In this document: piece after piece, positions 1-59,270 of the stretch | How positions within the stretch are numbered: the first letter of the stretch is position 1 | Layout of the letters: the number at the start of each line of letters is the position of its first letter | Assembly: GCF_001194135.2 (NCBI RefSeq) | Contig: NC_069002.1 | Location: 28,838,831-28,902,830 of the forward strand | DNA length: 64,000 nucleotides | Direction: 5' to 3' | From: Octopus bimaculoides | Lineage: Eukaryota | Position numbers and translations under genes: made by a program | Notes under the pieces: model-generated | Seen by the model: the letters and a program-made list of their open reading frames with translations, nothing else | Told to the model about the DNA's origin: nothing | Database searches by the model: none

Positions 1-90
1 TGGGAAAACCAGGGCCAAAACGTCTTTGACAAACCTGGGTAGAAAAAATCATAACACCAGCAGCAACAGCTGTAGTAGCAGCAGATGTGC

Positions 91-472
91 TGTTGGCACT
101 CCGTCGCTTACGGCGATGAGGGTTCCAGTTGATCCGATCAACGGAACAGCCTGCTCGTGAAATTAACGTGCAAGTGGCTGAGCACTCCACAGACACGTGT
201 ACCCTTAACGTAGTTCTCGGGGATATTCAGCGTGACACAGTGTGACAAGTGCTGGCCCTTTGAATTACAGGCACAACAGAAACAGGAAGTAAGAGTGAGA
301 GAAAGTTGTGGTGGTAGAGTACGGCAGGGTTCGCCACCATCCCCTGTCGGAGCCTCGTGGAGCTTTAGGTGTTTTCGCTCAATAAACACTCACAACGCCC
401 AGTCTGGGAATCGAAACCGCGATCTTATGACCACGAGTCCGCTGCCCTAACTACTGGGCCATTGCGCCTCCA
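91..472 (-). mobile_element. tRNA-derived SINE (family A)
   Basis: Minus strand starts with a tRNA-like head (TGGCCCAGTAGTTAGG A-box, GTTTCGATTCCC B-box). A close, collinear copy lies at 34128-34508. Confidence 0.85.
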
Positions 473-1000
473 ATAGCAGCAATAGCAATTACCTAAACAA
501 TACAGCATTAGAAACAACAGCAGCAGCAACAACAACAAGAACTACAGCAACGACAACAAACATCTACAACAATACGTTTATTCTATATGAGAAAATATTT
601 GTTTATTTTCACTGAAATAATTTTACGCTTATTGCTTCTTAATTTCTCCAAGAGAGAAAATCGGAATCTAGAAACCGAAGAATCACAGCTTGGACCTGGT
701 TAGGGTCGGTTTCAGACATTTTATATATCAAGTGGTAAGGTCATTTTTATAAATCAAGTGCTAAGAAATGTTAATTTTTTCATTATAATTACATACGTGT
801 TAAGGAGAAAGAATACTTAGATTAGTGTATAATTCTATCAAGATGGGTATGGGAGATAACTCTTATATCTTTATTAATTAGAAGAATTAATTTGGGCAAT
901 CGACAGTTCATCATTAATAATATTTATGAGCGTACATACAAACAGGCACGCACTTCATACATACACACATACATACATACATACGTACATATATACGCTG

Positions 1001-6071: not shown

Positions 6072-6185
6072 TATAAGAAGGGATGATCACTAGGTGGACA
6101 TCCGATATGCTAGGAGATCATCCACGATCTGGATGATCTCTTTCTAGCGTATCGGATGTCCACTTAGTGGTCATCCCTTCTTATA
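6072..6185. repeat. Fold-back element with ~53-bp arms and 5-nt loop
   Basis: Arms 6072-6124 and 6130-6185 differ by 3 transitions and a 3-nt indel; TATA at both ends. Confidence 0.9.
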
Positions 6186-6306
6186 NNNNNNNNNNNNNNN
6201 NNNNNNNNNNNNNNNNNNNNNNNNNNNNNNNNNNNNNNNNNNNNNNNNNNNNNNNNNNNNNNNNNNNNNNNNNNNNNNNNNNNNNNNNNNNNNNNNNNNN
6301 NNNNNN

Positions 6307-6339
<33 letters not shown>

Positions 6340-6859
6340 TATAAATAAATATATACATATATATATAGTTGAATCTCCAATCATTTTGCTCCTTTTATAT
6401 TTCGCGTGCGTGCGTGCGTGCGTGCGTGTGTGTGTGTGAAATAATCCGGGGATGTTTCCGGGTATGGCTTTCTTTCGCAACTGCTTGATAACTTTGTATA
6501 ATTTGCACAAATGAAAAATTATTGTGGCAAGGTGGGCTAAAACGTAATAATTGTGGGGTTTTATTTGTTGTCAAATTTCATTTTTATGACACCAAATTAT
6601 AAAATGAATTATGATTTTCGGAATAAAAATTATGTATTTATTAAATTCATACGTATTTAAACACATCTCTCCATTTGCATATTAACAAAACTCTTATAAC
6701 GCAGTGATCAATCTGGAGAGGAAGCCACTCAATTTAGTGTTGTTGCTGTCTCCAAGAGTAAACAACATCCACAGCGAGGAGATAGTAGTCGTGACAACAC
6801 AAATAGGGGGAGAATAGAGCGTCTGAGAAAGAGCAAAATTGGAAGCGAAGGTCTGTCCG

Positions 6860-7290
6860 AGCTGACCCCCAAGAATCCTACAAGTAACAGGACGCATCCT
6901 AATTTATGAGTTTAGTCGTTGGCTGGATACGAAATCCGACCAATGGTAATCCTGCGAAGTATCCTGGCACCAAAGGAGTCCAAGCGGCTCCTAAGGTCCA
7001 AGTCTCGCAACTGTAGAGCAACACATGTAGGACCAGAGACCTGAAGACTGTTTGGTAACATTCCTCGACATACCTTGTTGAATCCTGCGTAAAGTGTTTC
7101 TTTCTCTGAGGATCTGGCTGGGGTGACGACTTGCGTCGGTCGGGCACATGGTTACGGCGGATGATGAATGTATATCGCAGAAATTGAGACTCACTAAAAC
7201 GCTGCCCACGACCACCCTAGCAAATACCAGCAAATGGTGAATGCAGCGACGTAGTGCAGCGGCACAATAACCTATACCTGACCCTGACTT
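6860..7290 (-). mobile_element. Degenerate RTE-clade LINE RT C-terminal fragment
   Basis: VFRSLVLHVLLYSCETWTL matches the RTE VLLYGCETWTL motif; MRPVTCRI follows; frameshifted. Confidence 0.65.
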
Positions 7291-7509
7291 GACATGAAAG
7301 TCGAGAGGTATAACATGTTTTGGCAAGGCTGTTTTAGCGCCGCCTCTTTGGCGCCGTTGATTCGACGCTGACTTTTTGACATCAGACGTTTTAATGTTTC
7401 AATTGTTTTAATATTTCTCTCATCCTCCCTCTCTACTTCTCTCTCCCCTATTTTCTGTCTATCTCTTATGTGTGTGAGCATTTAATTATATCAGTATGTG
7501 TGCGTAATG

Positions 7510-7548
<39 letters not shown>

Positions 7549-8228
7549 CATTCTCATTACTCATATATTTATATATCTGAATGTGCGTGTGCCCATGTGT
7601 GTGCATGTTTGTGCGTGTATGTGTGCGCGCGCGTATGCGTACGTGTGTTTCCCTCCAGTGCCAGGAGTTCTGTCACCAAAATGAGTTGAATACCATATAA
7701 CGCCAACTAGTCAGCGACCAATCAACACGCCAAATCGTTTCAGTCCAAAGATTGAGTCACTAAAGTATCTGTTGTAATCGTATTGAAGGAAATGTAGTAA
7801 TGACAGATATTGAGAAGAGGCTGAGCGTTGTCATATAAGGTAGCGAAACATTTTTAGTGTGAACAAGCCAGCAATAATGGCTATTATAAGTATTGGCATA
7901 CAATTATGTTAAATATTTAATTGCGATGTAGTTGTAATGTAAGTTTTACATTTCAAAAGACGATATTTAAAATTAAAAATTTATAGATGTTTGGCGTCTA
8001 ACTAGGCATTTGTAATTCTGTTTATGAATGTTGCCAGGTTATATGATAAAATGCTTCTCGAATATCCGCCTTTTTCTTGCGGATATTTCCACCTATACAC
8101 GATATTCGTGTATAGGTTTTACGTGCATGTTGTTTAGCTAGAAACATTGTGCTCTATCCTGATTGTATATTAATAATTTTAATCGTATTATATGTTGTAT
8201 TATACACACACACATTAAGTATGCGACT

Positions 8229-8337
8229 TCGATAATGTTTATTATATACTGCAGCTTCTAATTCAGACTTTAAATTTTCTTTTACTTGTGTAGCTGTCTT
8301 GCACATCAGCAGATAGATTTTACGCTGTCCTTATATA
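8229..8337 (+). promoter_or_regulatory. Candidate type-3 Pol III promoter module A (PSE-like block + TATA)
   Basis: About 70% identical to 8507-8614. Similarity ends at GCTGTCCTTATATA. Promoter function is inferred. Confidence 0.4.
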
Positions 8338-8358
8338 TTGGGTTATCCCATAAATAAT

Positions 8359-8446
8359 GCGATGCTTTCAATCGCATGGACTAAAAGTCGGAAGGAGATG
8401 GGATAAACTACCTGCATCAACTTGCTTTAAAAGCAGGTAGTATTTT
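8359..8446 (+). ncRNA. Candidate 88-nt Pol III small RNA A, partly U6-like
   Basis: G start 21 nt after the TATA; 5' stem-loop GCGAT-GCTTTCA-ATCGC; AT..ACTAAAA..GGAA segment; 9-bp 3' stem; first T4 at 8443-8446. Confidence 0.35.
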
Positions 8447-8506
8447 ACCTTGGAATTATTCGTAGTGCAAGTTTTGAAGAGTGCAGTTCACACTAAATAT
8501 GTGATG

Positions 8507-8614
8507 TCGATAATGCATACGTCTTAGAGCTGCTTCTAACTCAAAACAGAATTTTGTTTTAGTTGTGCGGCGTTGTTACACATCAGTGGATAGGTTTTAG
8601 GCTGTCCTTATATA
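8507..8614 (+). promoter_or_regulatory. Candidate type-3 Pol III promoter module B
   Basis: Diverged duplicate of 8229-8337; TTATATA at 8608-8614, followed by a 22-nt spacer and GGGG. Confidence 0.4.
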
Positions 8615-8636
8615 CTTCAGACCAGCGATGTAATTC

Positions 8637-8750
8637 GGGGACGAACCGATGATACAGTAGCGATTATCTGAAATAACAGCGGAATATCGATATCTGTCGT
8701 TCTCTTTCACTTCCGAGTTGATTTGATCCTTGAAGTATACTGTGTTTTTT
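8637..8750 (+). ncRNA. Candidate 114-nt Pol III small RNA B
   Basis: G start 22 nt after the TATA; GGGGACGA can pair with TCGTTCTC (8697-8704); first T-run of 4 or more is T6 at 8745-8750. Confidence 0.3.
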
Positions 8751-9136
8751 AACACTATACATCTTTAAAGGGATATCCCTTAAACGAAATATCGAAGCTA
8801 CTAGCGCTAACAACACACGTACAGGAAGTATGTGACATCAATAATGTATTATGCAGGTTTTCTTCTTACTGTTCATATTCCCTTCTATGAGCGTGTGTTT
8901 GTGTTTATTATAACACAAGCTGACAGTCAATCGCGTGCTTCACCCCCAGGTTGGGCTGATTACAGTCATGTGAACAGCCTAACCTAGGACAAGACACAGA
9001 ATAGACGATCAATTTTTGAAATAATAAACATATCTATCCACTCTAGCCAATGAATTGAGTTCTGTATCAGATAATGTTTACACTTCACAAAATATAATGT
9101 ATTTTGATATACTTTAGAACTCTTACATTACAACAT

Positions 9137-9190
<54 letters not shown>

Positions 9191-10216
9191 GTATGTATTT
9201 ATGTATGTATGTGTGCGTATATATGAGTGTGCGTGCATGTATGTACCTAAGTATGTATGTATGTAAGTTTGTACTTATATCCAGCATTTTATTTTCTCTC
9301 TATATTTAAGTCTCTACCTTATAGTTTGTGTAAATGCATGCACACTTGTAAACAGATCCATGTGCATCAGTGTGCGTGTGCGTGTATGTATATACTTATG
9401 CATTAATGTATGCATACGCTCATACGCACAAATGTTTATCTATGTTACTTAGCAATAAAATAGGATAGATACATATGTGTCTTCGTGTGTATGCATGATA
9501 TCAATGTATCTACGTAACTAACACACAGAATGTATGCGGTAGTGTATCTGCGACACTATCGCCCTCCCTTTTGTACCTAAGTCTCTCTCTCTCACTCTGC
9601 CTTTTCCTATCTATATATCTATATTTCTGGATGTGCCTGTGTGTGTGTGTGTGTCTCTGTGTATGCGCGCGCAAGTATGTGCGGATCTATGAACAAAACA
9701 AACACAGGAAAAATACAAAAACAGAAATACATCAAAAGAACTCGATGTTATCACAAGTGTAATGTTGCGTAAGTACTACTTCACAAATGTGACTATGATG
9801 TTAATGCTGGTTTACATAGCAATATATATATAGTTTGAGATGTGTTAAACAGCTCACATGATGTGTTCGTGTATGCCAAGCGACAACAGATAAAAGCGTG
9901 TTTCACAAGTCACTGGCTGCTTGGCCAAAGAGATATACCTATAAATTCTTACGCGAACGAATACAGGTTGAAAAATCTACCTCTGATCTCCCGAGAGGTT
10001 GTCGTCTTGATCTCCTCATAATAATGGCGCGTTTTCAGTCATGTCGTTTTTAGCACTTCAGCAATTACTATCGTTATCATGTTTCCGTTATTTGTTTAGG
10101 TGCAGATTTAAATAATGCATAGTCATGTTGGTACTAGTGTACTTAATATAGTGAACATGATAATTTTAATCGAGAAAATACCTGTATGGAGCTAAGGTAA
10201 GTTAAGCAATATTCTT

Positions 10217-10426
10217 TTCTACTCTAGGCACAAGGTTCGAAATTTTTGGAGAGGGGGCCAGTCGATTAGATCGACTCCAGTATGTAACTGATACTTAATT
10301 TATCGACCGTTGAAAGGATGAAAGGCAAAGTCGACCTCGGCGGAATTTGAACTCAGAACGTAAAGACAGATAAAAATACCGCTAAGCATTTCGACCGGCG
10401 TGCTAACGTTTCTGCCAGCTCATCGC
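10217..10426 (-). mobile_element. tRNA-derived SINE (family B, Meta-like central domain)
   Basis: GAGCTGGCAGAAACGTTAGCAC head, GAGTTCAAATTCC B-box and GCCTTTCATCCTTTC domain; many copies in the window. Resemblance to the MetaSINE domain is from memory. Confidence 0.85.
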
Positions 10427-10476
10427 ATTCGTAGGCCAACTGGAATATAATAGAGAGAGAGAGAGAGAGAGAGAGA

Positions 10477-23659: not shown

Positions 23660-24240
23660 GGAAAGAAAGAAAAACAACTCTGCCATCTGAGATTTGTAGA
23701 TGACATCATGTTCTGTTAACAAACTGTTTAACAAGAGACAGAGGAAATACAAAGAGAATTATTTTGCCTGGAAGCAAGGTTAACTGTCTGAGAATGAACA
23801 GAAATAGAAAGAAAACAAAAACTTACACGAATTGATGAGGTAACACCAAAAGTGTTTGCGATAGAGGAAACGGAAACACAACAAGCAGCAGACTCCGTAT
23901 ATTTAAGATTATGAATAAATGCGGAATAAAAAGACAGAGAAATATGTAAAGGAGGGATAAATTTTAGGCTGTGCCGCGTTCAGCAAGCATGGCCGTGTTA
24001 GGAAGTTACCCCCTCGTTGTCTGTTTCAAAAGAAACATGAATGAGTGATTAACAAACAACGGGGGGAAAACGTAAAATCTAACAGTAGAGACAACCATTG
24101 GACAAAATTCATTCTGAAATGGCGATCCATGCCAGGGCAGAGCAAGGAAGGAATGGAGCGATGAGAAGGAGACTTACTGGGAACCCAGTCTATTCATATG
24201 ATAACATCAAGCGGCTAACTGAAACAGTAGTAACGACATG
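23660..24240 (+). mobile_element. Degenerate RTE-clade LINE RT fragment
   Basis: LCHLRFVDDIM (the RTE LRFADD motif), followed by decayed downstream RT and C-terminal motifs. Confidence 0.6.
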
Positions 24241-30729: not shown

Positions 30730-32471
30730 ATGAGTGCAAAGAAACGGAAGTATCTTGACGAACATAATCGATTTAGATTCATATCCCTCCAAAAGGGTGA
30801 CACAGAAGTCCCCCAATGTGCGATACGTTACAAAACTTTGAGCATTGATGGAATGTGACCCTCACGCTTGGAACGCCACTTGAGGACAACATATCCTGCT
30901 CTTGCAGACAAGCCCAAGGTATTCTTTGAAACAAAAAGACATTCCTTGAAGCAAGCTAAGTTGGATGGTGGTAGGATATTTCGGCAACAAACTTCAATGA
31001 TTGTTGAGGCTTCCTATGAGATCGCCATATTAATTGCAAAGAGCAAGGAGAGCCATAACATCGGAGAGTCTCTCATAAAACCAAATCTACTGAGTGTAGC
31101 GGAACTCGTTCTGCGGAAAGACAGTGCAAACAAACTTTCCCAGATTTCACTAACAAACGATACAGTCAAGACAAGGACCGACGACTTGTCTCAAGACATC
31201 AAAGATCAGATTCTCGACCAGGTAAGAGATTCTCCTGTTTTTACCATCCAGTGTGACGAAACGACTGACATCGCTCAATGTTCTCAGCTACTGGTATATG
31301 CTTGTTTTGTGTCAGGCAATTGTGTAAAAGAGGAAATGTTGTTCTGTCACCCTATGGATAGTTGTACAACAGCAACAGTTATTTTTCAGGGTGTATCAAT
31401 TTTCTTTCAGGAAAACCAACTTTCATGAGATTCGCTGGTAGGGGTGTGCACTGATGGAGCTCCAGCTATGCTTGGTCTGCAATCTGGATTCATTACTAAG
31501 GTGAAAGAAAAAACCCATCTGTTGTAGGTACCCACTGCATACTTCATCATGAACCCTTAGCATCCAGGACCTCACCTACTGAAATGAGAAATGTCCTGAA
31601 CTTGGCTATCAAAGTTGTCAACTTTGTTAAAGGTGGAGCCTGAAACAGTCGTCTTTTCAAACTGTTGTGTAAAGATATGGAATCTGAACATGATGCTTTT
31701 TCACACGAACGTACGATGGCTATGAAAGGGGAACATGTTTGGACCGCTTTATGAACTACGCTTTATGAAGTAGCAATATTTCTAGATTTTCTGCAGAAGG
31801 CAGATCTCCATGACAAGTTCAGCTATCTCTAGCTTACCTGGTGGACATCTTCGAAGCGTTGAATGCTCTCGACCTTAAACTACAAGGGGAAAACAACATT
31901 CTCACGCACCGCGACACCATTCGGACATTCATGGCCAAATTCGACCTCTGGAAATGTCGAATTCAGCAGGGGGAAATACAGCTAGTTATAGTTACTTGGA
32001 TTCTGCTCTCATTCACGGTAGCCTTGGTTCCGAGTTAAAGAAACAAATAACCACTCATCTAATTGACTTGGAAACAGAATTCATCAGATACTTCCCAGAT
32101 ATGGATGAAAAGCGGGAAGCCTGAAAATTCCTCAGGAACCCATTTCAGTGTGAAGTGACTCCCGTTTTGGATGAAGTGCAAGAGGATTTTCTTGAGCTGA
32201 AGCCCAACTCCCCAGCTAAGGGAGACTTCAAAGAACTGGATCTTGAAACGTTCTGGATCAAGTACCTTCCTGTTTACCCTCTGATCTCACATCAGGCCCT
32301 TCGGATTTTAGCGGCTTGGATCCACGTATCTTTGTGAGGCTGCATTTTCCACGGTCGTTGCTGTACAGGAACAGGTTGAACGTTGAAAGGGACTTACGTT
32401 GTGCACTGTCTGGCATTCAACCACGCATTCAAGATCTTGCAGCCAAGAAGCAGTGCTAAGTATCTCACTAA
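30730..32471 (+). pseudogene. Buster/Charlie-family hAT transposase pseudogene
   Basis: MSAKKRKY..., PQC zinc-finger remnant, SHNIGESLIKP, IQCDETTDIAQ, GVCTDGAPAM, HCILH, C-terminal IQPRIQDL; multiple stops and frameshifts. Confidence 0.9.
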
Positions 32472-32825
32472 TAATGTGACCAGTTCATATTCGATGAAAA
32501 AAAGTTCTTTTTTTTTTTGCTCAGAAGCAGTGTCAAGTAACTCACTTTCTGTATAATGTGATTATATTTATAAAATTATACATGCTTTGTNNNNNNNNNN
32601 NNNNNNNNNNNNNNNNNNNNNNNNNNNNNNNNNNNNNNNNNNNNNNNNNNNNNNNNNNNNNNNNNNNNNNNNNNNNNNNNNNNNNNNNNNNNNNNNNNNN
32701 NNNNNNNNNNNNNNNNNNNNNNNNNNNNNNNNNNNNNNNNNNNNNNNNNNNNNNNNNNNNNNNNNNNNNNNNNNNNNNNNNNNNNNNNNNNNNNNNNNNN
32801 NNNNNNNNNNAATATTCTACTCTAA

Positions 32826-33280
32826 GGCGGCGAACTGGCAGAAACGTTAGCACGCCGGGCGAAATGCTTAACGGTATTTCATCTGTCTTCACGTTCCGAG
32901 TTCAGATTCCGCCAAGGTTGACTTTGCCTTTCATCCTTTCGGGATCGATAAATTAAGTACCAGTTGCGTACTGGGGTCGATCTAATCGACTGGCCCCCTC
33001 CCCAAAATTTCGGGCCTTGTACCTAGAGTAGAAAAGATGACCCCAGTACGCAACTGGTACTTAATTTATCGACCCCGAAAAGATGAAATGTAAAGTCGAC
33101 CACGGCGGAATTTGAACTCAGAACGTACCAACGGGCGAAATACCGTTAAGCATTTCGCCCAACGTTAGCACACCGGGCGAAATCCTCAACGGTATTTCGT
33201 TCGCCGCAATGTTCTGAGTTCAAATTCCGCCGAGGTCGACTTTGTCTTTCATCCTTTCGGGGTCGATTAATTAAGTAAGC
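32826..33280. mobile_element. Three family-B SINE copies in +/-/+ orientation
   Basis: Full plus copy 32826-33037, minus partial 33038-33165, plus partial 33163-33280. Confidence 0.85.
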
Positions 33281-33735: not shown

Positions 33736-34127
33736 AAATTCATAACATAACCCTTGTTTATTCCTTTGTCATCTTATTTTCTTATTTCCGCTTTGTACTT
33801 AACTAACGCTTCTTTCTGAAGCATACATGTATTGAGTTCCACACCAAGTTATTAGTCTTACAATGCCTAACCGAAATTTAAATATAACCACACGTGGACG
33901 GTTGGTGATGTTTATTTTTCCCTTCTTCACTAGGCTTTTTCCTTTCTCTTTTACGACGAAGAACCAAGCTAGAAACGTTAAAAACGCTATCCATTCACCA
34001 ATCGTCAAAGTAATATATAATTCTTCTGCACGTCCTCACGTTGGTTATTTTCTTTTTTCTCTTTTCGTTTTCTTCGTTTCATGAATTGTTTCTTCGTTGA
34101 ATTAACTATACATATGAATTTTTATGT

Positions 34128-34508
34128 TGTTGGCACTCCGTCGGTTACGACGACGAGTGTTCCAGTTCATCCGATCAACGGAACAGCCTGCTCATGAAAT
34201 TAACGTGTAAGTGGCTGAGCGCTCCACAGACACGTGTATCCTTAACGTAGTTCTCGGGGATATTCAGCGTGACGCAGTGTGACAAGGCTGACCCTTTGAA
34301 TTACAGGTACAACAGAAACAGAAAGAAAGAGTGAGAGAAAGTTGTGGGGAAATAGTACAGCAGGGTTCACAACCACCCCCTGCCGGAGCCTCGTGGAGCT
34401 TTAGGTGTTTTCGCTCAATAAACACTCACAACGCCCGGTCTGGGAATAGAAACCGTGATCCTAAGATCGCGAGTCCTCTACCCTAACCATTGGGCCATTT
34501 CGCCTCCA
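34128..34508 (-). mobile_element. tRNA-derived SINE (family A)
   Basis: Collinear with 91-472. Confidence 0.85.
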
Positions 34509-35254
34509 CGAATTTTTATATAAATAAGGATAAGCTCGTTATTTAAAATACCGATCATATCAAGTGGCCAGCATGGGAATATANNNNNNNNNNNNNNNNN
34601 NNNNNNNNNNNNNNNNNNNNNNNNNNNNNNNNNTATATATATGAATGTATGTATACATAAGCATTAGAATAGATAGATACATAATGTGACCTCGTTTTTC
34701 TGATTTTTAGATACCCAATTGTCTCCCCTGCTGACGACTAGGTGCAATAATTGTTGTGCCTGTGACACTTACGGAGACAGGAACACAGCTGTGATTTTGT
34801 CTCCAGACAATTACAGGAGAATTCTCGATCCTTGAGAAAACTCCGTTTCTGATTTAGAGCTCTTATTAAATACTGTGCCAGCCTCTCTGGAAGCGAATTT
34901 AATTTCAATAATTTATTTAACATAGCATTATTCGACGCCATCACGCGCGCGCCTGTGTGTGTGTGCGTGTGCGTGTGTGTGTGTATGTGTGTGTGTGTGA
35001 ATAGATATGCGAGAGTATGTTTGAGTGTATATACACACCTGTGTGAATGCCTATACAGCTATAGAGCGCATCCACAATTAATGGCTTGCAGAACGGCTTC
35101 TCATTCGCTATAGAATCTACCATAGATTTTCTTTTGTGCTGTGCTGTGCAAAGGGGTTAAATCCGGAAAATCCGTGGATACGAAGCGAACTTCTTAACTA
35201 CTGTTTTAAATTTATTTCTATAATTGTTCCTAATCTTAGCACTAGTGCAGCAGT

Positions 35255-39100: not shown

Positions 39101-40170
39101 GTGAACCGACAAGTGACCATCGATGAGATGGCATGTTTTCTGCAAATTAGTCGCGTTTCTTATTTCTTTATTTCCTACAGGGGGCTAAACATAGAGGGGA
39201 CAAACAACGACAGACAAAGGGATTAAGTCGATTACATCGACCCCAGTGCGTAACTGGTACTTAATCTATCGACCCCGAAAGGATGAAAGGCAAAGTCGAC
39301 CTCGGCGGAATTTGAACTCAGAACGTAACGGCAGACGAAATACCGCTAAGCATTTCGCCCGGCATGCTAACGATTCTGCCAGCTCGCCTGCAAATTAGTC
39401 GCGTTTCTGCATACGAAATCATTTACAAGCCTCGCTTCTTCAAAGTGTATGCGAGATGGATGCCATGAAAGGTTACCGAAGTGCATAAGCACGATCGTGT
39501 GGATATTTGTGAACGCTTACCCGACCGCTACAACGATGAAGGTGATTATTTTGGAGAGAATAGTCACGCGAGAAGCGACATTGATCCATCATCTTGAGCC
39601 AGAATCCAAAAGGCAGAGTATGGAGTGGAAACGCCTGGAATCACCAACGAAAGAGAAATTCAGGACAATATTCCGCAACAAACGTGATACTAAACGTTTC
39701 TTGAGACGCTAAGGGGCCTATACTAGAACATTACCTGGAAAACGGGTTTACGGTGAAATACTCGCCAACGAACTGAAATCACCAGTTCACACCAAACGCC
39801 AATGTCTATTGTTAAAGCAAGCGTTATCGTTGCACGACAATGCACGCCCACATACGACCGCCCACACCGTTGAAACCGTTGAAAAATTGTGTTTCGAGTT
39901 TATAGTCCAGATCTCGTCCCTCCCGACTATTACATATTTTGACCGATCAGACATCCTTTCCGAGGTCGTCAATTTGCTACGGAGTGAGAAGCGAAGGAAG
40001 TCGTGTAAAAATAGCTGCACGACTAACCAAAGACCTTCTTCTAACACGGTATAAGTAAGCTTGTGGACTACTGGACGACGTACATTGAAAAGCAAGAAGA
40101 CTACGTCGAAATAATGTAATAGCTCAACACCTGCTTTTGTTTTCATAAATTATAGCAACAAGAGTGCGAA
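39101..40170 (+). mobile_element. Decayed mariner transposase interrupted by a SINE
   Basis: NRQVTIDEMA, ARWMP, EPESKRQSMEW, LHDNARPHTT, YSPDLVPPDY; the 5' part is lost in the gap. Confidence 0.85.
39161..39387 (-). mobile_element. Full-length family-B SINE with 20-21 bp TSD
   Basis: CTGCAAATTAGTCGCGTTTCT occurs at 39140-39160 and 39388-39408. Confidence 0.9.
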
Positions 40171-42869: not shown

Positions 42870-43810
42870 CCTTTGGCTAAAACACAAGCATAAGAAGTGG
42901 GAGGAGAGGTTTGTAATATTTTGTGTGCCTGTGCGTCTTTTTTTCTTTTTTGAATCGGTGGGAAAGGGTGGGTTTGGAGGCGGAGGTTGAGAAGGTATGG
43001 GTGAGATGGGTACGGGTTGGGGTTCACATTGACATTCCTTCTTCCACTTCCTTCTCCCTCCAGCGACCTTCCACGTTTCATCCTCGTTCGTTTTTACCCT
43101 TTTTCCACCCTCCCCGGCTCCTTCTCGCCTTCCTCCTGAGCTTCTTTGTTGTTTTTAAGAGGGCAGTCCGCTCTAATGTGGCCCTTTTGGCCACATTTAT
43201 AGCAACGAGGGATTCTGCCCTCTACCCACACTCTCAACACCGTTTCTCCCACTGTCACCGTTTCCGCCATCTTTTCCAAACGTTCCACCGTTCTTTGTAT
43301 AATGATGTCTAGTATCTTTCCATTTGGGATCAATTCTAGGTGAGATCCTGCCCACCCTGATCCTGGTAACATGTTTACCCAAGTAAGTGGGCAGGAGTGT
43401 CCATTTTTCCCCACGTAGAACCTCAGTGGAGTGTCTTCTTGCTTCCTCTTCAGAGACAAAGATAACCGCCAGAGGCGTATCTTCTTCCTCAAGTATAAAA
43501 CGTTATACTTTCCTTCAACTTTTCCAGACATTCGTCCATCTCCTCCTGCGTCTTACTTTGTTTTGAAAACGTTCTGTAAATTATCACTTTGCTTTCCATC
43601 TTCATCTTGTCTTCCGCTGGGATGAGGGGCTCAACTTTGTGTTCGACCGCTCCTTCTTTACCATATCTTGAAATTTCTTAAGCAGGTCTAAATTACAATA
43701 CAGTTCATTCTGTTCCAGCATGCCATGAAGGAAAGAGGGCAATATTGCTTCACATTCAGGCAGCCTTGAATAAGGATCAGGACCGAACGTCTTCCAGCGC
43801 ACATCTAAAT
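42870..43810 (-). mobile_element. Related LINE ORF1 fragment
   Basis: VWVEGRIPRCYKCGQKGHIRADC CCHC knuckle, in the same context as the plus-strand copy. Confidence 0.75.
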
Positions 43811-58639: not shown

Positions 58640-59270
58640 CTACATCAAGACTACTGGCCAATACCAGCGACCCCAGCATTTCACTGATACTTTATTTTAT
58701 GGACCTGAAAAGATGGAAGACACCGATAACATTGGCGGAATCTGAAACTAGATTGCAAAAAATAAGCTACGACCGGATGAAATAAGCTAAACATTTTGTC
58801 CGACGCCCAAACGATTTTACTGGCTCCCTGCCTACTGCAGATTAATAATTCTTCCTAATTTTGGCACAGTCCAACAATTTTGAAAGCAGAGAATATGTTC
58901 TTTTCTACTCTAGGCCTGAAATTTTGGGGGAAGGGGTAGTCGATTAGATCGACCCCAGTACATAACTGCTACTTAATTTATCGACCCCGAAAAGGTGAAA
59001 GGCAAAGTGGACCTCGGCGGAATTTGAACTCAGAACGTAAAGTCGCAAAATACCGCTAAGTGTTTCCCCCGGCGTGCTAACGTGTCTGCCAGCTCGCCGC
59101 CCTGGGCAGAGGACATGCTAATTACATTGATTTCTGTACTTTACTTTACCGATCCTGAGAAGATAAGAAAAGTTAACGTAAGCAGGATTTGAATTTGGAA
59201 CGTAAAGTGTCGGAAGAAATAGCACATGGCGTTTTGTCCGACGCTCTATCGATTCAACCAGTTCGTTACT
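58640..59270 (-). mobile_element. Tandem array of family-B SINEs (best copy 58899-59101)
   Basis: Three to four same-orientation copies of differing divergence. Confidence 0.75.

What the first reader, a model, noticed from the sequence alone, without database searches (positions are those of the whole stretch)
8229..8750. Tandem pair of candidate U6-promoter-type Pol III small-RNA genes
A ~110-bp module is duplicated about 278 bp apart at ~70% identity, and the similarity stops exactly at CTGTCCTTATATA. Each TATA is followed 21-22 nt later by G, then a different structured sequence ending at the first T4-T6 run (88 and 114 nt). In type-3 Pol III genes such as human U6, the TATA is followed by a 22-nt spacer to a +1 G, a PSE lies near -66 to -47, and oligo-T terminates. 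The shared TT.CACATCAG block sits at that PSE position in both copies. I infer that a conserved promoter with divergent payloads marks an unannotated small-RNA cluster.
Basis: partly seen in the sequence, partly recalled or inferred. Interest (0 to 1): 0.8.

Follow-up and report, generated by a model that had tools for sequence, protein, structure and literature searches.

The report
Duplicated promoter-like module in octopus DNA
Two full copies and one partial copy of a 130-160 bp sequence ending in a TATA box sit about 280 bp apart in unique octopus DNA; they are laid out like U6-type RNA polymerase III promoters in front of unrelated short sequences, but nothing I could test shows that they are transcribed.

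Summary
Module 8211-8337 matches 8489-8614 at 73% identity over 127 nt (E=4e-18), and the TATA-proximal 65 nt match at 82%. Similarity ends exactly at CTGTCCTTATATA, and the downstream stretches are no more alike than shuffled sequence. A third, partial copy holding only the distal motif lies at 8812-8852.

The layout fits a gene-external (type 3) Pol III promoter. A conserved block sits 12 bp upstream of an 8-bp TATA, as in insect U6 genes, centred about 51 bp before the predicted start.

The other supporting points are weak. A first T4 run 60-150 nt downstream occurs at 25% of random positions in this window. Payload 2 is unstructured. Payload 1 is only modestly structured, and its best fold uses the TATA-to-start spacer. 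Neither payload matches any Rfam family, tRNA, U6 or U6atac. I could reach no octopus snRNA promoter, orthologous locus or expression data.

The module is not an abundant repeat: it is absent from the other 63 kb of the window and from 50 kb of other Octopus DNA.

Verdict: a plausible but unproven pair of lineage-specific Pol III small-RNA genes (about 0.35). The main rival is a neutral local duplication whose breakpoint falls at a TA run.

The parts
8176..8337 (+). Module copy 1, the promoter-like unit. Its core, 8211-8337, aligns to copy 2.
   Evidence: blastn 73% over 127 nt, E=4e-18; profile match 8176-8339
8455..8614 (+). Module copy 2. Its core is 8489-8614.
   Evidence: and (D8)
8220..8237 (+). 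Distal conserved motif TATGCGACTTCGATAATG, copy 1, at about -139 to -122 from the predicted start. Possible enhancer or DSE-like site.
   Evidence: Pattern TATGYGAYNTCRATAATG is exact at three places, all in this locus
8498..8515 (+). Distal conserved motif, copy 2 (TATGTGATGTCGATAATG)
8298..8318 (+). PSE-position block, copy 1 (CTTGCACATCAGCAGATAGAT). It lies 12 bp upstream of the TATA and is centred about -51.
   Evidence: The conserved 24-mer is unique to the two copies. Geometry compared with the insect layout of PSEA 1-21 and TATA 34-41 (PMC1761439)
8575..8595 (+). PSE-position block, copy 2 (GTTACACATCAGTGGATAGGT)
8331..8338 (+). TATA box, copy 1 (TTATATAT). It marks the end of the similarity.
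8608..8615 (+). TATA box, copy 2 (TTATATAC)
8359..8446 (+). Predicted payload 1, 88 nt. It has a 5' hairpin (8359-8363 with 8371-8375), a small hairpin (8379-8389), a perfect 9-bp 3' hairpin (8407-8415 with 8433-8441) and T4 at 8443-8446.
   Evidence: Fold z -1.9 to -2.3. No Rfam family. Both ends are inferred, not observed.
8637..8750 (+). Predicted payload 2, 114 nt, ending in T6 at 8745-8750. No significant structure.
   Evidence: Fold z +0.7 to +0.9. No Rfam match even at E<=10. Both ends are inferred.
8812..8852 (+). Third, partial module copy: distal part only, with the motif at 8829-8846. No PSE/TATA block follows it.
   Evidence: blastn 80% over 40 nt, E=0.004; nhmmer E=0.0049; proximal block against 8853-9000 scores as random

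Best explanation
The locus is a small tandem cluster of gene-external (type 3, U6-like) RNA polymerase III transcription units specific to the octopus lineage.

Inferred mechanism:
1. SNAPc binds the conserved block at 8298-8318 and 8575-8595.
2. TBP with a Brf2-type TFIIIB binds the TATA box 12 bp downstream, at 8331-8338 and 8608-8615.
3. Pol III starts at a purine about 21-22 nt after the TATA, near 8359 and 8637.
4. Pol III stops at the first oligo-T, at 8443-8446 and 8745-8750.
5. The products are two unrelated small RNAs of about 88 and 114 nt with 3' oligo-U tails.

The shared distal motif at about -139 to -122 would act as an enhancer-like element. The third unit kept only that motif and is probably dead. 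The units arose by local duplication. In this reading the promoter stayed recognisable because it is constrained, while the transcribed parts diverged beyond recognition or were replaced.

What is shown: the duplication, its sharp end at the TATA, the spacings, and the lack of payload similarity. What is inferred: factor binding, the polymerase, both RNA ends, and expression itself.
For: - Module similarity is highly significant, while the downstream stretches are at random level, so conservation is confined to the upstream part and ends exactly at a TATA box in both copies.
- The geometry matches published type 3 promoters. The PSE centre lies about 50-55 bp upstream of the start and a TATA follows; in Drosophila and Anopheles U6/U6atac genes the PSEA occupies positions 1-21 and the TATA 34-41 (PMC1761439). 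In human the PSE lies about 40-70 bp upstream and a TATA specifies Pol III (PMC9652321). Here the conserved block falls at positions 1-21 relative to the TATA at 34-41.
- All units, including the partial third, have the same orientation with periods of 278 and 331 bp. The T4 of unit 1 lies about 10 nt before module 2 begins.
- The modules have almost no consensus RNA structure on either strand (-7.5 and -8.9 kcal/mol over 146 columns). They look like protein-binding DNA rather than an RNA gene.
- The module is not a dispersed repeat in 114 kb of octopus DNA.
- There is precedent for PSE/TATA-driven Pol III units whose products are not conserved in sequence, in human and mouse (PMC3509611), and for new ncRNA loci recognised by shared upstream motifs in C. 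elegans (PMC2527325).
Against: - No octopus snRNA promoter was available, so 'PSE' means only a conserved block at the right distance. The 12-bp 'spacer' (1 mismatch) is in fact better conserved than the putative PSE (5 mismatches in 21).
- The payloads match no Rfam family, tRNA, U6 or U6atac.
- Payload 2 is unstructured. Payload 1 from the predicted +1 is ordinary for this genome (z about -2, against a background mean of -0.5 and sd 1.5).
- The strongest fold of unit 1 (z -4.3 to -5.1) needs a 9-bp stem, 8343-8351 with 8398-8406, that lies in the TATA-to-start spacer. It would therefore not be in the RNA.
- The T-run evidence is weak. 58% of random positions have no T4 within 84 nt, 51% have none within 108 nt, and 25% have their first T4 60-150 nt downstream.
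- TATATA is very common here: 829 occurrences and 218 TA runs of three or more units. TA runs are plausible rearrangement breakpoints.
- A promoter conserved in front of non-conserved products is unusual.
- There is no expression or orthologue evidence.
Confidence: 0.35

Rival explanations
1. Neutral local duplication. A 130-160 bp segment was copied once or twice into nearby DNA by replication template switching or unequal exchange, and one breakpoint fell at a (TA)n run. The TATA, the 'PSE' and the T-runs are coincidences in AT-rich DNA, and nothing is transcribed.
For: - Every specific Pol III feature is individually cheap in this sequence. TATATA occurs 829 times in the window. A first T4 at 60-150 nt occurs at 25% of random positions. 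A purine at a fixed offset is trivial.
- Conservation inside the module is not concentrated in the putative PSE relative to the spacer (alignment).
- The third copy simply breaks off after 40 nt.
- The payloads show no family match and no convincing structure.
- The 27% divergence fits an old, drifting copy.
Against: - The similarity ends at exactly the same base after a perfect 13-nt match that includes the TATA in both copies.
- All three copies have the same orientation at a quasi-regular period.
- The distal 18-mer is kept in all three copies, with only four variable positions that the degenerate pattern allows for.
- Identity is higher next to the TATA (82% over 65 nt) than across the whole module (73%).
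Confidence: 0.3
2. A different kind of cis-regulatory module, such as a duplicated Pol II core promoter or enhancer. This includes the minus-strand reading, in which TATATAAGG (8337-8329 and 8614-8606) is a Pol II TATA box and the conserved module is the start of the transcript.
For: - The reverse complement of CCTTATATA is TATATAAGG, a good fit to the canonical Pol II TATA consensus (sequence; the consensus is from general knowledge).
- On that strand the conserved part lies downstream of the TATA, as a conserved 5' exon or RNA would.
- A minus-strand ATG ORF, 8154-8306, starts inside the module.
Against: - The minus-strand ORF is frame-shifted and stops after 15 codons in copy 2, and its substitutions are mostly non-synonymous (sequence).
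- A candidate splice donor in copy 1 (CAA|GTAAAA) reads CTAAAA in copy 2.
- The module has no conserved RNA structure on the minus strand, and no pair shows a compensatory change.
- A 278-bp spacing leaves no room for ordinary Pol II genes.
Confidence: 0.13
3. Fragments of a transposable element or satellite. The modules are ends of a low-copy element whose boundary is the TATA, for example at a TA target site, and the 'payloads' are flanking or inserted DNA.
For: - A sharp loss of similarity at a fixed base is typical of element termini.
- Both 'payloads' can close a stem that starts just after the TATA: 8343-8351 with 8398-8406, and 8615-8620 with 8731-8736. This looks slightly like short inverted-repeat insertions.
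- The window is full of interspersed repeats.
Against: - There are no further copies in the other 63 kb of the window or in 50 kb of O. bimaculoides and O. sinensis DNA, although other repeats recur many times.
- Tandem Repeats Finder reports no array here.
- There are no convincing terminal inverted repeats or target-site duplications.
- Three same-orientation copies within 700 bp and none elsewhere points to local duplication rather than transposition.
Confidence: 0.1
4. The module itself is the gene, an unknown RNA in a short tandem array, and the 'payloads' are fast-evolving non-transcribed spacers, as in 5S or snRNA arrays.
For: A conserved unit alternating with non-conserved spacer at a period of about 300 bp is the classic gene-and-spacer pattern.
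Against: - No Rfam match on either strand.
- Consensus folds are near zero, and neither single-copy fold is significant (z -0.3 and -1.3).
- 73% identity is low for functional paralogues.
- The plus strand carries three T4 runs inside the module, which would stop Pol III.
Confidence: 0.05

Closest known systems
Type 3 (gene-external) Pol III promoters of U6, U6atac, 7SK and RNase P/MRP RNA genes, in the vertebrate PSE+TATA and insect PSEA+TATA forms
   Same: - A TATA box lies about 21-22 nt before a purine.
- A conserved ~21-bp block lies 12 bp upstream of the TATA, matching insect positions 1-21 and 34-41 (PMC1761439), and is centred about -51.
- The unit is short and ends at oligo-T.
- There is an additional conserved upstream motif.
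   Different: - The downstream sequences are none of the known type 3 products (Rfam and ARAGORN negative).
- The PSE-position block could not be compared with any cephalopod PSE. It shows no demonstrated similarity to human or insect PSEs, which evolve fast in any case.
- The distal motif sits at about -130 rather than about -200, and has no recognised octamer or Staf site.
PSE/TATA-dependent 'snRNA-like' Pol III transcription units of human and mouse (PMC3509611)
   Same: These are candidate units defined by a type 3 promoter signature in front of novel, short sequences that are not conserved. Function is proposed to be independent of payload sequence conservation.
   Different: Those units were found by genome-wide scans with known PSE matrices, and some were validated experimentally. 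Here there is no species-specific PSE matrix and no validation. The units here are tandem paralogues sharing about 130-160 bp of upstream sequence.
C. elegans ncRNA loci recognised by shared upstream motifs UM1-UM3 (PMC2527325)
   Same: A shared upstream motif with differing small-RNA products, and T-run termination taken to indicate Pol III.
   Different: Those are many loci per motif with demonstrated promoter activity. Here there are two and a half copies at a single locus, untested.
Vertebrate Y RNA and vault RNA gene clusters (from general knowledge, not tested here)
   Same: Small tandem clusters of roughly 85-115 nt Pol III genes with related upstream promoters.
   Different: Y and vault paralogues keep recognisable shared stems or internal boxes. 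Payloads 1 and 2 share nothing detectable and match neither the Y_RNA nor the Vault Rfam model.

Membership tests
Type 3 Pol III (SNAPc/TATA) transcription unit | TATA box about 25-30 bp upstream of the start site | tested here: inconclusive
   TTATATA is present at 8331-8337 and 8608-8614. The start site is unknown and was itself placed by counting from the TATA. TATATA is very frequent in this window.
Type 3 Pol III (SNAPc/TATA) transcription unit | PSE bound by SNAPc, centred about 50-55 bp upstream, at a fixed distance from the TATA | tested here: inconclusive
   A conserved block, unique to the two copies, lies at the right place with the insect-type 12-bp gap. No octopus PSE was available for comparison. 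The scan for U6 genes preceded by CACATCAG found nothing in the reachable collections.
Type 3 Pol III (SNAPc/TATA) transcription unit | Termination at the first run of four or more T, giving a short RNA | tested here: met
   T4 at 8443-8446 and T6 at 8745-8750 are the first such runs after the predicted starts. This is not discriminating: 25% of random positions have their first T4 60-150 nt downstream.
Type 3 Pol III (SNAPc/TATA) transcription unit | Product is a known type 3 RNA (U6, U6atac, 7SK, RNase P/MRP, Y, vault, tRNA-Sec) | tested here: not met
   No Rfam hit at gathering score in the window, and nothing meaningful at E<=10 on the payloads. No tRNA. Alignment to remembered U6 and U6atac sequences is not significant. 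This is not required for a novel member.
Type 3 Pol III (SNAPc/TATA) transcription unit | Transcription by Pol III, with Brf2/SNAPc occupancy and discrete small RNAs | not testable with these tools
   No RNA-seq, ChIP or transcription assay data were reachable.
Interspersed repeat / transposable element | Multiple dispersed copies with varied flanks | tested here: not met
   Only the local copies were found in the 64-kb window plus 50 kb of O. bimaculoides and O. sinensis DNA. This bounds abundance only; the whole genome was not searchable.
Interspersed repeat / transposable element | Terminal inverted repeats or target-site duplications at the similarity boundaries | tested here: not met
   None is evident at 8176/8337 or 8455/8614.
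Tandem satellite / minisatellite | Head-to-tail units similar along their whole length | tested here: not met
   TRF finds no array. Only the module part of each unit is similar.
Structured RNA gene array with the module as the gene | Conserved secondary structure or a family match for the conserved unit | tested here: not met
   Consensus folds are -7.5 and -8.9 kcal/mol, with at most 2 compensatory pairs on the plus strand and none on the minus. Single-sequence z is -0.3 and -1.3. No Rfam hit.

The most novel reading that the evidence does not exclude
Octopods carry lineage-specific tandem clusters of SNAPc/TATA-driven Pol III mini-genes. The promoter, about 160 bp with a distal motif, a PSE and a TATA, is held constant while the 90-115 nt products diverge completely between neighbouring paralogues. 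That would be a family of fast-evolving small nuclear or cytoplasmic RNAs with no counterpart in Rfam.
Probability: 0.3. Interest if true: 0.6.

Novelty: new member of a known kind. Interest (0 to 1): 0.35.

Why it matters
If the units are real, the locus would give the first sequence-level handle on a cephalopod type 3 Pol III promoter. Such a promoter is needed to express guide RNAs or short hairpin RNAs in octopus. It would also add new small RNAs in a lineage known for unusual RNA biology. A promoter that stays constant while its products diverge completely would raise the question of what such RNAs do.

If the units are not real, the locus is a useful warning. In AT-rich genomes, a TATA box, a purine about 22 nt downstream and a T-run about 100 nt further on arise easily by chance next to any duplicated segment.

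Tried and rejected
- **Rfam.** I searched the whole window at gathering score, the region at E<=10, and each payload alone at E<=10. Only chance-level hits came back, such as mir-641, mir-17 and bacterial sRNAs at 12-16 bits.
- **ARAGORN.** No tRNA, and so no tRNA-Sec.
- **Resemblance of payload 1 to U6** (a 5' hairpin followed by ACUAAAAGUCGGAA) and of payload 2 to GAUACAG..GAUUA. Local alignment to remembered human U6 and U6atac is not significant: 106 and 321 of 1000 shuffles score as well against U6. Rejected.
- **Telomerase RNA**, a known type 3 product in some lineages. No TTAGGG-template-like 9-mer occurs in either payload. Only CCTAACCTA, which fits TTAGG, occurs at 8978-8986 inside a stem of unit 3. 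Rejected.
- **Box C/D or H/ACA snoRNA readings** of the payloads. The boxes are absent or misplaced (by eye, and no Rfam support).
- **Minus-strand coding.** The ORF is frame-shifted in copy 2.
- **CpG island.** CpG observed/expected is about 1.0 at the locus, against a window median of 0.83 with sd 0.30, so unremarkable.
- **A fourth unit upstream** (8040-8121). Its similarity to the module is not significant.
- **Finding orthologues or paralogues.**
  - Exact look-ups of five window ORFs found none on record.
  - A protein search with the nearest long ORF, 6994-7326 minus strand, found no homologue.
  - Two metagenome pattern scans and one prokaryotic genome scan gave 0 hits.
  - Two Octopus loci were fetched through a transposon protein. 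They confirmed the taxon but held no module and no snRNA gene.
- **Literature.** I found no cephalopod or mollusc U6 or PSE sequence to compare against.

Full report
**Context.** The window is AT-rich (about 34% GC) draft eukaryotic sequence with many N gaps and microsatellites. It shares numerous interspersed repeats, at 82-93% identity, with loci fetched from Octopus bimaculoides (GCA_001194135.2) and O. sinensis (GCA_006345805.1). The finding lies in a stretch of about 2.9 kb (about 6100-9015) that has no repeat matches apart from microsatellite-like stretches at about 7467-7640, either to the rest of the window or to those 50 kb of Octopus DNA.

**Checking the observation.**
- The duplication is real and significant. 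Region 8211-8337 aligns to 8489-8614 at 73.2% identity over 127 columns (E=3.9e-18).
- The 65 nt next to the TATA are 82% identical without gaps (D8).
- A two-sequence profile stretches the match to 8176-8339 and 8455-8616.
- CTGTCCTTATATA is exact in both copies.
- The 24-nt block TTRCACATCAGYRGATAGRTTTTA occurs only there, with no match in any of 100 shuffles.
- Identity in register drops from 80-90% to 15-30% immediately after the TATA. The downstream stretches, 8338-8457 and 8615-8790, align no better than shuffled sequence (score 11 against 10.1 +/- 1.8).
- New here: a third, partial copy at 8812-8852 keeps the distal motif (TATGTGACATCAATAATG; E=0.004-0.005) but has nothing resembling the proximal block or TATA after it.

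**What the modules are not.**
- They are not a dispersed repeat in the 114 kb of octopus DNA available.
- Tandem Repeats Finder sees no array.
- They are not a structured RNA. The consensus folds of the two copies are -7.5 kcal/mol (plus strand) and -8.9 kcal/mol (minus strand) over 146 columns, and the single-copy z-scores are -0.3 and -1.3.
- They are not coding. The 50-codon minus-strand ORF that starts in copy 1 is frame-shifted after 11 codons in copy 2.
- They behave like duplicated DNA-level elements.

**Fit to a type 3 Pol III promoter.** Published descriptions place the PSE about 40-70 bp upstream of the start, centred at about 50-55 bp. A downstream TATA box specifies Pol III and is universal in metazoan U6 genes. 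In Drosophila and Anopheles the PSEA occupies positions 1-21 and the TATA positions 34-41 (PMC9652321, PMC1761439). If the TATA at 8331-8338 is placed at 34-41, positions 1-21 fall on 8298-8318 (CTTGCACATCAGCAGATAGAT), and in copy 2 on 8575-8595. With a start at the G 21-22 nt after the TATA (8359 and 8637), the block is centred at about -51. The PSE-to-TATA spacing is the one architectural fact that does not depend on how the start was chosen. A further conserved 18-mer sits at about -139 to -122 and is the only part kept in the third unit.

**Why this is not proof.**
- No cephalopod PSE is available. PSE sequences evolve quickly even among insects (PMC1761439), so comparison across phyla is uninformative.
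- Between the two copies, the 12-bp 'spacer' has 1 mismatch while the putative PSE has 5 in 21 (alignment). The block is therefore not set off from its surroundings by selective conservation.
- T-run termination is nearly uninformative here. In this window 58% of random positions have no T4 within 84 nt, 51% have none within 108 nt, and 25% have their first T4 60-150 nt downstream.
- TATATA occurs 829 times, in 218 separate TA runs of three or more units. TA runs are plausible breakpoints for local rearrangement.
- A G at a chosen offset carries no weight.

**The payloads.** Neither matches any Rfam family at gathering score or usefully at E<=10, and none is a tRNA. Resemblances I noticed to U6 are not significant.

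- Payload 1 from the predicted start folds into a 5' hairpin, a small hairpin and a perfect 9-bp 3' hairpin just before the T4. Its z-score is only -1.9 to -2.3, against a genomic background of -0.5 +/- 1.5.
- The much better fold (z -4.3 to -5.1) needs a perfect 9-bp stem between 8343-8351 and 8398-8406. This stem uses the TATA-to-start spacer, so it should not be in the RNA if the start is at 8359. About 2.75% of random 107-nt windows here fold that well, so the stem may be chance. It is still an unresolved conflict.
- Payload 2 has no significant structure (z +0.7 to +0.9).
- All stems in payload 1 are perfect Watson-Crick pairs, so they give no strand information. The only strand hint is that the plus strand of payload 1 lacks a T4 run while its minus strand has two.

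**Weighing.** These points favour the Pol III reading:
- the exact coincidence of the homology boundary with a TATA in both copies;
- the insect-like spacing from the block to the TATA;
- the common orientation and quasi-regular period of three units;
- the T4 of unit 1 lying about 10 nt before module 2 begins;
- the non-RNA, non-repeat nature of the module;
- precedents for PSE/TATA units with non-conserved products (PMC3509611) and for ncRNA loci recognised by shared upstream motifs (PMC2527325).

Against it stand the low prior for any given local duplication, the cheapness of each individual feature in AT-rich DNA, the absence of payload signal, and the spacer-stem conflict. I put the Pol III small-RNA cluster at about 0.35. 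The rivals are a neutral local duplication at about 0.30, another kind of regulatory module (including a minus-strand TATATAAGG Pol II promoter) at about 0.13, a low-copy transposable element or satellite fragment at about 0.10, and the module as an RNA gene at about 0.05.

**What could not be done.** The decisive comparisons are real octopus snRNA upstream regions, a genome-wide copy count, orthologous loci and small-RNA data. All lie outside the collections reachable here. Exact look-ups of window ORFs, a protein search with the nearest long ORF, two metagenome scans and one prokaryotic genome scan returned nothing. The literature library holds no cephalopod U6 promoter. The decisive next steps are listed in their own section of this report.

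**Verdict.** If real, the locus is a new member of a known kind: type 3 Pol III units with novel products. Interest is moderate.

Noticed in passing
window 8058-8121: Two adjacent perfect hairpins: AATATCCGC/GCGGATATT at 8061-8069 with 8079-8087, and ACCTATACACGA/TCGTGTATAGGT at about 8091-8117, followed by TTTT. Fold z is -8.2, beyond all 400 background windows (which were 107 nt, not 64). The end, GTGTATAGGTTTTA, matches 13 of 14 bases of module 2's GTGGATAGGTTTTA. A T5 run in the first loop argues against a Pol III product. Origin unknown.
   Followed up: partly
window 8930-9016: After the partial third module there is a strong hairpin, AGGTTGGGCTG 8948-8958 with CAGCCTAACCT 8975-8985 (fold z -4.5), ending at T5 9012-9016. 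It is preceded by a TATA-like TTTATTATAA at 8904-8913, with a G 21 nt later at 8935. The layout is similar, but there is no module-type PSE block. The 3' arm contains CCTAACCTA, which fits a TTAGG-type telomere template, inside the stem.
   Followed up: partly
window 8001-9000: This kilobase holds four perfect inverted repeats of 9 bp or more with 3-60 nt loops, against a window average of about 0.75 per kb and about 0.2 per kb in shuffles. The enrichment in hairpin-forming sequence is mild.
   Followed up: partly
window 30868-31428 (+): An ORF fragment of a hAT-type transposase (FAM200/ZBED5-like). Its closest relatives, at 73-82% amino-acid identity, come both from Octopus species and from decapod and stomatopod crustaceans (Homarus, Oratosquilla, Macrobrachium, Palaemon). 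This pattern suggests horizontal transfer of the transposon between marine invertebrate lineages.
   Followed up: partly
window 43094-43531 (-): ORF with a CCHC zinc knuckle (Pfam PF00098, E=3e-7). It is probably a retroelement gag remnant.
   Followed up: no
window 86-474, 34115-34509, 10208-10430, 32824-33277, 39156-39390, 58895-59104: Several families of short interspersed repeats recur within the window and in O. bimaculoides and O. sinensis loci at 82-93% identity. One repeat, 9015-9151, begins right after the T5 run of unit 3.
   Followed up: no
window 23955-23974: GGATAAATTTTAGGCTGTGC matches 17 of 20 bases of the module segment between the CACATCAG block and the TATA (nhmmer E=3.5). 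No TATA or CACATCAG lies nearby. Probably chance.
   Followed up: no
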